A DNA stretch of 64,000 nt, taken from Blastocladiella emersonii ATCC 22665 (taxonomy: Eukaryota; Fungi; Blastocladiomycota). The stretch is taken from contig JANHCV010000014.1 in NCBI GenBank assembly GCA_025594325.1, positions 1,054,001-1,118,000 of the forward strand, written 5' to 3'. Positions 59,625 through 63,944 of the stretch are shown here, in pieces (the stretch's first letter is position 1; each line of letters opens with the position of its first letter). A program made the position numbers and the translations under genes. Below the pieces are notes generated by a model. That model saw only the letters and a list, made by a program, of their open reading frames with translations. It was not told where the DNA came from and did not search any database.

Positions 59625-61104
59625 GGTGGTGTTTAGAGAGTGCTACGAATGGGAAGGGTCAGCAGTGCATCCATGTAACGGCCCGAGCATGAGTGCATAC
59701 CGCGGTCGTATCGGTATCGCTTACGAGCGGGCAGGGGCGGGACGGGAGAGAGAGGGGGCGACGGGCAGGCTTCACGTCTTGAGCGCCAGGGGGAGAGCAG
59801 GCAGGGAGAGCAGTCAGGCGGGAAGCGCGGGCCCGCACGACCCGACCCGAGCGAGCCGATCCGACCCGGCCGCGGCGAGCGAACGAACGCGTGCGTTTCA
59901 CGCCGCGTGACCGCCCCAACTGACGTCACTGACGCCACGATCGCCATTCAGCGGTCAGGTGAGTGGCGCGGCGCGTCCCCTCGTCGTTCGCCGCGGCCGT
60001 CAAGGGAGTTGGTCTCGCCAACCGCAGGAGATGATGAGCGGGGATGTGGGACACTCGAAGCGCTGCTGCTCACATAACGCGGTAACCTATGGCGCGAGCA
60101 AACACGCTGGCCGACCTACCCTCCGCTTGCGCTCGACTTTGCATCGACCGAGCCGCAACACATGATGTACATGGTCTCGGACTACGAAAGAGTGTCTCAA
60201 TGCAGTTAAGATAAGCCACTGGTCGATCGCTCCACTATACTGTGCTGCTCGTCCATCAAACATTGTGCTGACGGCGGCCCGCAAGGGTTCGGTGCGAGCT
60301 CGCTGGCAATCCCGTCATGCTTTCCAAACCGTAGTCTCGGCGTTATTATAGTTCCGACCTCTCAATGGTGGTCATTCTAGAGTTAGGTCCCTTGGACTTG
60401 TTTGGACGTCGTGTAACGTTGCGCGGAACTCCTGTATGCTCACCAGCGCATTCGCACCGTGCCGAAGGCGGTCGCGAAGTAGTAGATCTCATGCTGCGCA
60501 AAGATTTCCATCACTCAAGAGTTTATCGAGTATCGAGTATGGCCACAACCTTAGGAGCTGGACTTGGCAGCGGGCACGCCGTCGCGGGTCAGGAGCCGCC
60601 TCGTGCGCTGACCGAGCAAGCAGCCCGATCAGGGACGAGACCAAGTAAACTTTCTATGCTCATGTACAACCTTCCAATTACACCTTAATCACTAGACTCG
60701 CTCCGCGACGAGTACAGCCGTGCGGCCCGACCGGTAACGACCCGACCTGGTCGGGACGGCCGACCCACCACAACCAACTAGCGACCGACTCAAACAATGA
60801 TTGTCTCAATCCATCGCATCAAGCTGGATGCTCCTCGAGCAATACATTGAAGCGTACCGTAGAGAGGCTCGCGAAAGCAGCGCGACCGGCGGCCTCCCGA
60901 TCAAGCATCAGCTGATGCGTGGCGTCGGCCCCAGATTGCTCGAAACCGCCCTCAGATGCCCCGGCCCTTCTCGACACCTCGCTGTTCGCGTTCGAAGCGC
61001 AAGACCCGCTCTCGCACAACCCTGGCCTCTCCATGCAACTAGCGACGCATCGCGCGCCTACTTGATCTCTTGCACTTCTGCCGCGCCGCCTTGCTTCAGC
61101 GACC

Positions 61105-63944
61105 ATGGAGTTCGCCCTGGCCGGCTTCGCCATCAGCGTGGGCCTCAAGGACATTGGGAGCCTTCTTTCGAAGCTCAAGGACCTGGTCGAGGCCATCAAC
61201 ACGGCGCGCGAGTTCCTTGAACTCAGCCGGGTCCCTCTGCGCCGGTGCACGCACCTGTACGATGCGCTCAACTCGGCGCCGCTTGACGCCGACGGCGAGC
61301 CGCCGGCCGCGCTGGCGAAACCGACGATGCTGCTCCGCGACACGCTGGCCAAGATTGTGTAGACGGCGACCAAGCTGGCCAAGGCCCCGCTGCTCAAGCG
61401 CGTCATGTTTGCGCAGCAGCACCGCGACACGCTCGTCGAGGCGGGCAACACGCTGACGCAGCTCGCCGGCGATCTCCAGCTCGCGGTGCAGCTCAGCTTC
61501 TCGCCGCTGGAGATGACGGCCGAGATCAAGCTTGCGACCGAGGCCGCGAATGCGTCGCTGCTGGGATCGATGGAGGAGCTGCTTGCCATGCACCACTCGG
61601 AGCTATACCGCGACCTCGCGCTCAACAACAAGGACGTGCCCGAGGCGCTCGCGGCGCTGCAGAGCCGGCTCAACGCGTCCGAGGTGCAGAACGACAAGAT
61701 GATGCATATGATGCAGCAAATGTTCAAGAACTTGCACGGCACGATCGTGCGCCACTCAACGATCCACATTGAGCGCACCGACAGCGAGAAGGCGCTCGAC
61801 CGCTTAGCCGTGACCTCGTTTGATTTCACCGAGTCGGACATCGTTTTGGGCCGCGGCGGCTTTGGCGAGGTCGTATCCGCGACGTGGATCAAGTCCAAGA
61901 CCGAGGTCGCCATCAAACGCCTACTCCCGCTCGAGGGCCGGCTGCAAGCCGACCGCCCCGTCATGGACATGGTCGCCAAGGAGGCGCTGATCTGGAGCAA
62001 CCTGCACCACCCGCACATCCTGCCGCTGCTCGGCGTCTCGCTTACGTGCAACACGCCGTTCCTCGTGATGCCGCTCATGGAGGGCGGCGACCTGTCCAAA
62101 TACGCCGCGGGCCGGCCGCGCGAGCACCTCCGGCTGCTGCACGAGACGGCGCAGGGCATGGCGTACCTGCACGGCGAGCGGATCCTGCACGGCGATCTCA
62201 AGGCCAACAACGTGCTCGTCGACGGGTACGGCCGCGCCCAGGTGTGCGACTTTGGCCAGTCGCGCGCGCTCTCGCAGGCCAGCCGCGCGTCCACGTTCAA
62301 GAGCGGGTCCGTCGGCAACGTGCGCTGGATGGCGCCCGAGCGGTACAAGCGCGGCGCCAAGTACGACTTACACCCGGACTTGTTTGCTTTCGCAATGCTT
62401 GCGTACGAGGTGGTTGCGGGGAACATTCCGTTCCACGACGAGCACGATGTCGAAGTGGTCAAGGACTGGATCAAGGAGGGCGAGCGCCCGGACCCGCCGA
62501 CGGACGCGGCCAGTTACTCGCCCGAGCTTTGGGCGCTGGTCGTCAAGTGCTGGGCGCACGATTGGACGACGCGGCCGACCTTTGCGGCCGTCGTGACCGA
62601 GCTTAGTGTTCTGCGACCTCCTACTGCTTCTGCTTCTGATCTGCCCACTGTCACCGTCGTCAACCAGCTGACCGCTTTGAAGCTTTCTCCTGCCTCCTTG
62701 TCGCCCTCGTCGTCGGTCGAACTGCCTGTCGCGGCATCCGCAGATGGTTTCGAGGTCCATTCCTACCACTCGCTCCTGTCGCTACTCGTCCAGACTCACA
62801 CCACGTTTGACACGTTTTGTAGGGACTCGTCGTTCCGACCGAGCTCGACGGCGACCGCTTTATTTGGGAGCAGCGCCACAAGCTGGCCAGCGGCGCCCGG
62901 TCCTCGCTCAACGTGACCGAGCTGGCCGTAGGCCCGTACGGCCTGGACGTCATCGAGCGCGTGCGCGACTTTCCGCAGCAGCGGATGACGGAGCTGATCC
63001 TGGACGGCTGCGCGCTGGGCCCGAACGACGCGCGCACGCTCGCCACCAGCTTCCCGCGGACGCTGCGCGTGCTGAACCTGAACAACAACCCGCTCGGCGA
63101 CCGCGGCGTCAAGGCGATCGCGTACACGCTGCCCGAGGGCTTGGCTGAGCTGTACTTGTTCAACACCCAGATCACGGACATTGGCGTGTACGAGATTGTG
63201 GCGATGCTGCCGCGCACCATGACCGCGCTGTCGCTCGCGTGCAACCAGATCTCGGACAACGGCGCGATCGCGATCGCCGCGCGGATGCCGAGCATGCTCG
63301 ACGAGCTGTACCTCGGCGGCAACCAGTTCACCGACGAGGGCGCGATCGTGCTCGCGCCGTCGCTGCCGCGCAACCTGGCCCGGCTCTCGCTCGAGGTCAA
63401 CCGGATCGGCTACGCGGGCGCGGTCGCGATCGCGGCCCGGATGCCGCCGTCGCTGCGCGAGCTATCGCTGTACACCAACCAGATCACGTCCGCGGGCGCC
63501 GAGGCGCTCGCGTTCCAGTTCCCGCCCACGCTGAGGAAACTCAACCTGTCCAACAATCCGCTCGGCGACGCGGGCGCCGTCGCGATCGCGGCCCGGATGC
63601 CGCGCATGCTGTGCGAGCTGTACCTCGGCGGGACTGGGATCACGGATAGGGGCGCCGGGTACCTCGGCACGGCGCTCCCGCCGACGCTCATGAACCTCGG
63701 GCTCGAGAACAACCAGATCGGCGACTCCGGCGCGGGCGCTATTGCCGGAAACTTTCCGATGGCGCTGCGCATGCTGTTCTTGTCGGACAACCAGATTGGC
63801 GACGCGGGCGCCGAGGAGATTGCAAGGTACTTGCCCCAGTCGCTCGCGTCGCTGTACCTGCACGGGAACAAGGTTGGGTTCACGGGCCGCCGGGCGCTCA
63901 AGACGGTGCGGCACTATGATCTGTTGACGCTTTTTGAGATGTGA
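61105..63944 (+). CDS. MLKL-like four-helix-bundle + TKL-type protein kinase + LRR protein, with in-frame TAG at 61360-61362
   Basis: 61105-61362 and 61405-62916 share a frame separated by one TAG. Kinase: LGRGGFGEV, VAIK, HGDLKANNV, DFG, WMAPE, D.FAFA. A predicted intron 62755-62822 joins in phase to ~11 26-aa RI-type LRRs ending at 63944. Confidence 0.72.

What the first reader, a model, noticed from the sequence alone, without database searches (positions are those of the whole stretch)
61105..63944. MLKL-like death domain + active kinase + LRR sensor in one gene: candidate self-contained immune receptor
Seen: an N-terminal ~130-aa amphipathic helical domain with the pattern of MLKL-type four-helix bundles (hydrophobic start, ..KRVMFAQQHRDTL..LT...DLQL), a helical brace region, a TKL-type kinase with intact VAIK/HGD/DFG, and ~11 RI-type LRRs joined by a predicted intron. 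Established: MLKL four-helix bundles and related HeLo/RPW8-like domains execute membrane-disrupting cell death; animal MLKL has a pseudokinase and no LRR, and fungal NLRs use NACHT/NB-ARC cores. Inference: a sensor-kinase-executioner fusion without an NTPase, a possibly undescribed innate-immunity or allorecognition architecture in early-diverging fungi.
Basis: partly seen in the sequence, partly recalled or inferred. Interest (0 to 1): 0.75.

Follow-up and report, generated by a model that had tools for sequence, protein, structure and literature searches.

The report
Broken MLKL-like kinase-LRR fungal gene
This Blastocladiella emersonii gene joins a helix bundle related to the cell-killing head of MLKL, an intact-looking kinase and leucine-rich repeats in one protein. 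This copy has a stop codon inside the bundle and is probably dead, while its family, found only in blastoclad fungi, is undescribed and could be a one-chain sensor and killer.

Summary
Window 61105-63944 (+) is a two-exon gene of Blastocladiella emersonii ATCC 22665, already in GenBank as hypothetical protein H9P43_009479.

- **Layout:** an N-terminal helical bundle plus brace, a TKL kinase with every catalytic motif (GRGGFG, VAIK, HGD, DFG, APE), a 68-nt GT-AG intron (62755-62822), and twelve 26-residue LRRs.
- **Kinship of the bundle:** it is a diverged MLKL_N domain. An Allomyces relative passes Pfam's MLKL_N cut-off and aligns end to end with this family's N-domain (hhalign 99.9%). AlphaFold models match the MLKL N-terminal domain at Z 10.5-11.7. 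Protein-language-model neighbours are MLKL_N clusters.
- **Distribution:** the N-domain family has 11 representatives among 1.84 billion, and all named ones are Blastocladiomycota. I found no paper describing it.
- **This copy is broken:** an in-frame TAG (61360-61362) cuts helix 3. The GenBank model hides it with a 60-nt "intron" that is conserved coding sequence in all relatives. Its two closest paralogs carry frameshifts.
- **Function:** a sensor, switch and executioner role is inference only.
- **Earlier scan notes:** the scan had already flagged this same family on other DNA of this genome.

The parts
61105..62754 (+). Exon 1: N-terminal bundle, brace, kinase and Ser/Pro-rich linker (550 codons including the internal TAG)
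   Evidence: One reading frame. The start Met aligns with the start of paralogs L014 and L016-L019. The exon ends ..DGFE|GT, matching ..DVFE|GT in paralog L015.
61105..61488 (+). MLKL_N-like four-helix bundle (helices 1-4 by homology to the L014 model)
   Evidence: AF2 model of the closest paralog: pLDDT 87.6, helices 3-30, 37-55, 67-92, 95-100 and 102-127. VIA-align to the human MLKL N-terminal domain 6ux8: Z 11.7, 140 of 152 residues. Pfam MLKL_N hits 5 of 9 family members below threshold and relative P0017 above threshold.
61360..61362 (+). In-frame TAG (codon 86) in the middle of helix 3
   Evidence: It aligns without any gap to Glu in L014, Gln in L015 and Lys/Ala in the other paralogs.
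61357..61416 (+). 60-nt in-frame 'intron' of GenBank model H9P43_009479 that removes the TAG; most likely an annotation artefact
   Evidence: P0014 maps with this gap. The segment codes for residues conserved in all paralogs and orthologs. Its GC is 0.65, equal to the exon mean, against 0.39-0.53 in five family introns. The annotation was ab initio.
61489..61842 (+). Brace-like helical region between the bundle and the kinase
   Evidence: Helices 133-159 and 123-206. This is the best-conserved N-terminal stretch. It aligns to P0017 residues 87-247 at 34% identity, E 5e-27.
61843..62604 (+). TKL (ccin-type) protein kinase domain, non-RD (HGD), all catalytic motifs present
   Evidence: Pfam PF07714, E 6e-48. 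Motif positions. PDB best matches are ZAP-70, Roco4 and RIPK4. Relative P0017 is named TKL-CCIN by its source.
62755..62822 (+). Intron (GTCCAT..branch-like GACTCAC..TTTTGTAG), 68 nt
   Evidence: Frame change from 1 to 3 with conserved protein on both sides. The position is shared with L015 and L020. The GenBank model uses the same junction. GC is 0.53 against 0.65-0.68 in the exons.
62823..63944 (+). Exon 2: conserved cap (..GDRFIWEQR..), LRR domain and stop
   Evidence: ORF and translation. Paralog L015 shares the cap motif.
62985..63920 (+). Twelve tandem 26-residue LRRs (LxxLxLxxNxIGdxGaxaIAxxLP)
   Evidence: Repeat segmentation. 78-bp DNA period. Pfam LRR_6. PDB: ribonuclease inhibitor E 3.8e-25, GALA, NLRP5 and NLRP3 LRRs.

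Best explanation
This is a real two-exon gene of Blastocladiella emersonii. It belongs to a family found only in Blastocladiomycota. The family's proteins run, from N to C, as follows: a diverged MLKL_N four-helix bundle, a helical brace, a catalytically complete non-RD TKL kinase, and C-terminal RI/NLR-class leucine-rich repeats. There is no signal peptide, no transmembrane segment and no NTPase. The window copy has one nonsense codon (TAG, codon 86) inside helix 3 of the bundle. It is therefore most likely a recently inactivated pseudogene or null allele, and the GenBank model hides the stop with an artificial 60-nt intron. For intact members, the most likely mechanism (inferred, not shown) is as follows. 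The LRRs hold the protein in an inactive state and bind a ligand. Binding triggers kinase activation and autophosphorylation. That releases the brace and bundle, which oligomerise and act on a membrane as the MLKL, HeLo and CC-R domains do.
For: Architecture: Pfam kinase and LRR hits, intact motifs, and an intron at a position shared by paralogs and used by the GenBank model. Single gene models with N-domain, kinase and LRR also exist in Allomyces javanicus (P0005, P0015) and B. britannica (P0011). MLKL_N kinship: Pfam MLKL_N is the top hit in 5 of 9 family N-domains, best E 3.3e-5 and 23.9 bits. Relative P0017 scores 31.3 bits against a cut-off of 27 over profile positions 2-134 of 142. P0017 aligns with the family N-domain profile at hhalign probability 99.87%, E 1.8e-31, columns 8-241 to residues 9-248. 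In AF2 models, MLKL chains score Z 10.4-11.7 and cover 140 of 152 residues, start to start. The nearest ESM Atlas clusters carry MLKL_N, score 0.92. Narrow range: 11 hits among 1.84 billion representatives, and all named ones are blastoclads. Broken copy: the TAG aligns to sense codons in every paralog with no gap. The assembly is HiFi plus Pilon. The nearest paralogs L014 and L015 carry frameshifts. No transmembrane segment was found; the highest Kyte-Doolittle 19-mer is 1.54.
Against: Structural matches are not specific: HIP1R THATCH (Z 13.0) and HHM (Z 12.5) score as high as or higher than MLKL, and Foldseek gives nothing at E<=0.001. The window's own two N-terminal pieces give no Pfam hit. 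Direct hhalign to the genome's clear MLKL_N genes is weak (P 0.01-0.08). Apart from the TAG the gene is flawless: 837 downstream codons are open and all kinase motifs are intact. So it could still be expressed from Met101 or through the annotated 60-nt splice, or the TAG could be one allele of a heterozygote. No transcript, phosphorylation, oligomerisation or cell-death data exist for any member.
Confidence: 0.62

Rival explanations
1. The gene is alive exactly as annotated (H9P43_009479, 903 aa). A real 60-nt intron (61357-61416) removes the TAG, and the protein works with a shortened N-domain.
For: The segment starts with GT, ends with AG, is in frame, and was chosen by the annotation pipeline. 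The rest of the gene has no defect.
Against: The 20 removed codons align residue by residue with coding sequence in every paralog and ortholog, at the same identity as the flanks. They include the family's conserved LLKR-type motif. The segment's GC is 0.65, equal to the exon mean, while five family introns are 63-74 nt with GC 0.39-0.53. The annotation was ab initio without RNA-seq. Removal would delete the end of helix 3, the short linker helix and the start of helix 4.
Confidence: 0.13
2. The TAG is not fixed in the organism. It is an assembly or polishing error, or one allele of a heterozygous locus whose other haplotig was purged, so the strain still makes a full-length protein.
For: There is a single lesion in an otherwise perfect 923-codon gene. 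The assembly workflow removed haplotigs with purge_dups.
Against: HiFi reads polished with Illumina rarely give substitution errors. Both closest paralogs are also disrupted, which suggests this subfamily is decaying in this strain.
Confidence: 0.15
3. The family has nothing to do with cell death or immunity. The MLKL_N-like bundle is only an oligomerisation or membrane-tethering module of an ordinary signalling kinase, regulated by its LRRs as in ROCO or LRRK-type kinases.
For: The kinase is active-looking, whereas the executioner MLKLs are pseudokinases. Similar helical bundles occur in non-death proteins such as THATCH and talin R13. The kinase domain evolves under strong constraint, dN/dS 0.08 against L015. 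The subfamily is conserved between Allomyces and Blastocladiella rather than turning over quickly.
Against: The homologous domains MLKL_N, HeLo and CC-R are, where tested, membrane-permeabilising death domains (reviews PMC12881547 and PMC9815663). Several features fit conflict genes better than housekeeping signalling: many paralogs, frequent pseudogenisation, LRRs as the most diverged domain (36-43% identity against 70% for the kinase), and a non-RD kinase.
Confidence: 0.35
4. The N-terminal domain is an unrelated helical bundle, and its resemblance to MLKL is convergent or due to chance.
For: B. emersonii copies stay below Pfam's cut-off. PDB profile E-values are about 0.6. Foldseek is not significant.
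Against: There is a transitive link through P0017, which is above Pfam's cut-off and aligns with the family at 99.87%. Sub-threshold hits fall in the same register in independent members P0008, P0010 and P0012. The alignment to Cladochytrium MLKL_N protein P0026 is collinear. The ten best family-bearing ESM Atlas hits all share MLKL_N or its clan.
Confidence: 0.1

Closest known systems
Animal MLKL (necroptosis executioner; PDB 4BTF, 6UX8)
   Same: The N-terminal four-helix bundle, then brace helix, then kinase fold, come in the same order. The paralog model covers 140 of 152 residues of the human N-terminal domain at Z 11.7. Pfam MLKL_N kinship holds at family level.
   Different: The kinase keeps VAIK, HGD and DFG and should be active, whereas MLKL is a pseudokinase. 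A C-terminal LRR domain is added. No RIPK3-type upstream kinase is implied. This copy is truncated by a stop.
Plant MLKLs (AtMLKL1-3, PDB 6KA4/6LBA; wheat Pm13)
   Same: A HeLo/MLKL_N-type bundle, brace and kinase-like domain with a role in immunity. AtMLKL3 matches the model at Z 10.5 over 149 residues.
   Different: Plant MLKLs carry a pseudokinase or an atypical kinase and a serine-rich C-terminal region, not LRRs.
Fungal HeLo / HeLo-like / 'BaMLKL' domains (HET-S, HELLP, NLR N-termini; PMC9815663)
   Same: They belong to the same superfamily of membrane-targeting helical bundles, with a hydrophobic N-terminal start.
   Different: They are triggered by amyloid templating or fused to NACHT/NB-ARC, and fungal NLRs are reported to lack LRRs (PMC12881547). 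No HeLo (PF14479), Helo_like_N or RPW8 Pfam hit appeared here at E<=10.
Plant helper NLRs with an RPW8-like CC domain (NRG1/ADR1)
   Same: One chain carries an MLKL-like bundle at the N-terminus and LRRs at the C-terminus. NRG1.1 CC-R matches at Z 7.8 and 17% identity.
   Different: The central switch there is an NB-ARC NTPase. Here it is a protein kinase, and no NTPase domain was found.
TKL-ccin fungal kinases and ROCO/LRRK kinases
   Same: The kinase domain is of TKL type. The Allomyces relative is named TKL-CCIN, and Roco4 is among the best PDB matches. LRRs occur in the same chain as a TKL kinase.
   Different: ROCO proteins place the LRRs N-terminal to a ROC-COR GTPase, which is absent here. 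Described TKL-ccin kinases are not known to carry MLKL_N plus LRR.

Membership tests
Pfam MLKL_N (PF22215) | Score at or above the curated cut-off (27 bits) for the N-terminal domain | tested here: inconclusive
   The window's two pieces give no hit. Paralog L015 scores 23.9 bits and 24.3 bits in the genome scan. Family relative P0017 scores 31.3 bits and Cladochytrium P0026 29.0 bits. P0017 aligns with the family N-domain at hhalign 99.87%. The feature is therefore met by transitive homology, not by this copy alone.
MLKL (animal/plant) proteins | Four-helix bundle followed by brace helices, N-terminal to the kinase fold | tested here: met
   AF2 models of paralogs L014 and L015. MLKL chains match at Z 10.4-11.7 start to start. 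The match is not unique, since THATCH and HHM score equally. In the window copy the bundle is cut by the TAG.
MLKL (animal/plant) proteins | Catalytically dead pseudokinase domain | tested here: not met
   GRGGFG, VAIK, HGDLKANN, DFG and APE are all present. One paralog (L019) has HGG instead of HGD.
MLKL (animal/plant) proteins | Membrane permeabilisation and cell death on activation | not testable with these tools
   No experimental data for any family member were found.
NLR / STAND receptors | Central NACHT or NB-ARC NTPase | tested here: not met
   No NTPase family appears in Pfam scans of the exon pieces or of annotated protein P0014.
NLR / STAND receptors | C-terminal ligand-sensing repeats (LRR) | tested here: met
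   Twelve LRRs. The best PDB matches are ribonuclease inhibitor and the NLRP5 and NLRP3 LRRs.
Receptor-like LRR kinases (plant RLK type) | Signal peptide, extracellular LRRs and a transmembrane helix N-terminal to the kinase | tested here: not met
   The LRRs are C-terminal to the kinase. No 19-residue window reaches Kyte-Doolittle 1.6.
HeLo / HeLo-like / RPW8 Pfam families | Profile match | tested here: not met
   None is listed at E<=10 for any of 9 N-domains. RPW8 clusters appear only as weak ESM Atlas neighbours, 0.85-0.91.
ROCO / LRRK | ROC GTPase and COR domains | tested here: not met
   Absent from Pfam results.

The most novel reading that the evidence does not exclude
Intact members of this blastoclad family are one-chain innate-immune or allorecognition receptors without an NTPase. 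LRR ligand binding switches on a non-RD kinase, and its autophosphorylation releases an MLKL-type bundle that permeabilises the membrane. That would fuse sensor, RIPK3-like activator and MLKL-like executioner in a single polypeptide. It would also show that the kinase and 4HB logic of necroptosis predates animals.
Probability: 0.2. Interest if true: 0.8.

Novelty: new variant of a known kind. Interest (0 to 1): 0.5.

Why it matters
MLKL-type bundles are known fused to pseudokinases in animals and plants, or to NTPase switches in plant helper NLRs and fungal NLRs. Fungal NLRs are reported to lack LRRs. A family that couples the bundle to an apparently active kinase and to NLR-class LRRs, in early-diverging fungi, would be a third way of wiring sensor, switch and executioner. 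It would also give a tractable test of whether phosphorylation-gated 4HB release is ancient. For this particular locus the practical point is smaller. It is probably a dead copy, and the GenBank model masks the stop with an artificial intron.

Tried and rejected
- **Foldseek against the PDB** with both models gave nothing at E<=0.001. Helical bundles are poorly discriminated there, so I relied on VIA-align, which is itself non-specific (THATCH and HHM are on top).
- **hhalign of the family profile** against the genome's two clear MLKL_N genes on C15 was weak: P 0.027 and 0.083 for single sequences, and 0.01 over 97 collinear columns for the pair. This was not used as proof.
- **PDB profile search with alignment A2** was swamped by kinase and LRR columns, so it was uninformative for the N-domain. 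With A1, MLKL chains reached only E about 0.6.
- **The chytrid kinase-LRR protein P0030** has no detectable N-domain similarity. The architecture outside blastoclads therefore remains open.
- **dN/dS** could not date the inactivation, because dS to every paralog is saturated.
I could not check whether the Allomyces and B. britannica genes have kinase and LRR in one continuous ORF.
- **An intron that removes the TAG** was considered and rejected.
- Exons and pieces were searched separately by reference, and intact paralogs were used for folding.
Full report
**What is there**

The window is C6:1054001-1118000 of a 32.65-Mb, 21-contig genome. Paralogs of the gene are annotated in GenBank as Blastocladiella emersonii ATCC 22665 proteins on contigs of identical lengths. 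An earlier scan note named this organism, and I confirmed it that way.

On the + strand, one frame runs from ATG 61105 to 62754, with a single in-frame TAG at 61360-61362. A second frame runs from 62823 to the stop at 63942-63944.

Pfam finds a Tyr/Ser-Thr kinase domain (E 6e-48) in the first frame and LRR_6 repeats (E 2.6e-50) in the second. No NTPase domain is present, and no hydrophobic 19-mer qualifies as a transmembrane helix.

**Kinase and LRR**

GRGGFG, VAIK, HGDLKANN, DFG and APE are all present. The kinase should therefore be active, and it is of the non-RD type (HGD). Best solved relatives are generic TK/TKL kinases: ZAP-70, Roco4, RIPK4, TNNI3K and MLK4. An Allomyces relative is labelled TKL-CCIN by its source.

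Exon 2 holds twelve repeats of exactly 26 residues, with a 78-bp DNA period. The closest solved matches are ribonuclease inhibitor (E 3.8e-25), GALA proteins and the LRRs of NLRP5 and NLRP3.

**Splice junction**

The 68 nt at 62755-62822 begin with GT and end with TTTTGTAG, contain a branch-like GACTCAC, and change the frame from 1 to 3.
- Exon 1 ends ..DGFE|GT. Paralog L015 ends ..DVFE|GT and L020 ends ..LLFD|GT at the homologous place.
- Conserved protein (..GDxxIWEQR..) resumes right after the AG.
- The intron has GC 0.53, against 0.65-0.68 in the exons.
- The GenBank model of this locus (P0014 = H9P43_009479, 903 aa) uses the same junction.
- Single gene models with N-domain, kinase and LRR exist in Allomyces javanicus (P0005 of 883 aa, and P0015) and B. 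britannica (P0011).

There is no transcript evidence. Each exon was searched by reference.

**The N-terminal domain**

Pfam gives nothing for the window's two pieces. Evidence from the family is as follows.
- **Sub-threshold Pfam hits.** In an alignment of the window pieces with seven paralog N-domains (A1), MLKL_N (PF22215) is the top family for 5 of 9 members. The best is E 3.3e-5 at 23.9 bits against a cut-off of 27, with residues 55-120 on profile positions 50-115. Allomyces members P0008, P0010 and P0012 give the same sub-threshold hit in the same register.
- **Transitive link, the decisive evidence.** Allomyces macrogynus P0017 (576 aa) is 34% identical to the window's post-TAG piece over its residues 87-247, E 5e-27. 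It passes the Pfam cut-off at 31.3 bits over profile positions 2-134 of 142. It aligns with profile A1 at hhalign probability 99.87%, E 1.8e-31, columns 8-241 on residues 9-248.
- **Chytrid relative.** Cladochytrium protein P0026, with MLKL_N above threshold, aligns collinearly but weakly, P 0.003.
- **Structure.** AlphaFold2 models of the two closest paralogs are confident over the bundle. L014 residues 1-160 give pLDDT 87.6 and pTM 0.82, with helices 3-30, 37-55, 67-92, a short 95-100, 102-127 and a brace helix 133-159. L015 is shown.
- **Fold comparison.** VIA-align against 48,161 PDB representatives gives these scores (similar):

| Chain | Z | rmsd / aligned |
|---|---|---|
| Human MLKL N-terminal domain (6ux8_A) | 11.7 | 3.3 Å, 140 of 152 residues, 16% identity |
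| Mouse MLKL (4btf_A) | 11.6 | 2.8 Å, 126 aligned |
| AtMLKL3 (6ka4_A) | 10.5 | 3.0 Å, 149 aligned |
| NRG1.1 CC-R (7l7v_A) | 7.8 | 3.2 Å, 108 aligned |
| HIP1R THATCH (1r0d_A) | 13.0 | 3.2 Å, 159 aligned |
| HHM (3ay5_A) | 12.5 | 3.6 Å, 147 aligned |

- **Limits of the fold evidence.** THATCH and HHM score as high as MLKL, and Foldseek finds nothing significant. The fold is compatible with MLKL but structure alone does not decide.
- **Protein-language-model neighbours.** The nearest ESM Atlas clusters carry MLKL_N (0.92), followed by RPW8 and MCAfunc clusters.

Taken together, I regard the domain as a diverged member of the MLKL_N superfamily, at about 0.85.

**Range of the family**

A full HMMER scan of 1.84 billion cluster representatives with A1 found only 11 proteins at E<=0.001. 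All named ones come from B. emersonii, B. britannica, Allomyces javanicus, A. macrogynus or A. arbusculus. The word search found only B. emersonii proteins.

Within the genome there are at least eight copies with this N-domain and 13 kinase matches at E<=1e-40. Two further genes on C15 carry a clear MLKL_N (58 and 49 bits), an active HRD kinase and a long non-LRR tail.

In a maximum-likelihood tree, the window copy pairs with L015 (96/94). That pair sits next to the two Allomyces javanicus N-kinase-LRR proteins (89/85, below the strict threshold). They are apart from the clade of the other five B. emersonii copies (100/99). L014 was left out of the tree because of its frameshifts.

**This copy is broken**

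The TAG aligns, with no gap on either side, to Glu in L014, Gln in L015 and Lys or Ala in the other copies. It falls in the middle of helix 3. Translation would stop after 85 residues. Re-initiation at Met101 (61405) would give a protein without helices 1-3.

The GenBank model bypasses the stop with a 60-nt in-frame intron, 61357-61416, GTGTAG..GCGCAG. That segment encodes 20 residues conserved in all relatives. Its GC is 0.65, equal to the exon mean, whereas five introns of the family are 63-74 nt with GC 0.39-0.53. I read it as an artefact of ab initio prediction.

The assembly is HiFi polished with Illumina reads, so a substitution error is unlikely. Haplotigs were purged, however, so a heterozygous null allele cannot be excluded.

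The two closest paralogs, which lie 11 kb apart on C5, are also damaged. L014 changes frame twice within exon 1, and L015 has a 1-nt insertion in the kinase.

Everything downstream of the TAG in the window copy is intact, so the inactivation is recent or incomplete. dS to all paralogs is saturated and cannot date it. dN/dS against L015 is 0.08 for the kinase, 0.18 for the LRRs and 0.40 for the N-terminal piece.

**Mechanism (inference)**

The argument is by analogy with three kinds of protein:
- MLKL, where phosphorylation of the kinase-like domain releases the bundle.
- Plant CC-R helper NLRs.
- Fungal HeLo proteins (reviews PMC12881547 and PMC9815663).

On that basis, an intact family member would be a cytosolic protein in which the LRRs autoinhibit and sense. 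The kinase would act as the switch, and the bundle plus brace would oligomerise and attack a membrane. The non-RD kinase, the many paralogs, the frequent decay and the LRRs being the most diverged domain (36-43% identity against about 70% for the kinase) all fit a conflict gene. None of this has been tested, and an ordinary signalling role remains a serious rival.

**Novelty**

The locus is already in GenBank as a hypothetical protein. I found no paper that links MLKL-like domains with Blastocladiella or Allomyces, or that describes an MLKL_N, active kinase and LRR chain. The reviews state that fungal NLRs lack LRRs.

Earlier notes of this scan had already flagged the same family at other places in this genome, including other broken copies. 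I re-derived the key points independently here.

Noticed in passing
G000:C15:1437357-1437647 (-) and C15:1556081-1556395 (+); loci L022, L023: Two paralogous genes carry a clear Pfam MLKL_N (58.3 and 48.8 bits) in a first exon. A brace, an active HRD/DFG kinase and a long proline-rich, non-LRR C-terminal region follow. This is a second MLKL_N-kinase architecture in the same genome.
   Followed up: partly
G000:C5:238227-239489 (-) and C5:249640-251107 (-); loci L015, L014: The window gene's two closest paralogs lie 11 kb apart and are both disrupted. L014 has two frame changes in exon 1, and L015 has a 1-nt insertion in the kinase. L015 also has three short introns in the kinase-LRR linker where the window copy has one.
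   Followed up: partly
Paralog gene models P0001-P0004 (loci L017-L020): GenBank models of the paralogs are inconsistent. Two stop inside the kinase C-lobe. One (P0002) is fused to a downstream RanBP1-domain gene. One (P0004) uses a 445-nt intron that removes the end of the kinase domain. The family is poorly annotated.
   Followed up: partly
L019 (G000:C20:1332148-1333395, -): This paralog has HGG instead of HGD in the catalytic loop, so the catalytic Asp is lost. The family therefore contains at least one pseudokinase member.
   Followed up: no
L016, L017 (G000:C20:1180578.. and C20:1375456..): No LRR exon was found within about 4 kb downstream of the kinase in these two nearly identical copies.
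   Followed up: no
window 60819-62474 (-): A 551-codon ORF lies antisense to exon 1. It has low-complexity Ser/Arg/Ala-rich content and is the kind of shadow ORF expected opposite a 65% GC coding region.
   Followed up: no
Here only ankyrin repeats hit Pfam, and its first ORF shows no similarity to this family's N-domain (hhalign P 0.38).
   Followed up: partly
P0030 (Polyrhizophydium stewartii, 884 aa): A chytrid protein has an unassigned 236-residue N-terminus, a related TKL kinase (32% identity) and a different class of LRRs (LRR_14/LRR_8). It may be an analogous architecture outside Blastocladiomycota, but no N-domain similarity was detected.
   Followed up: partly
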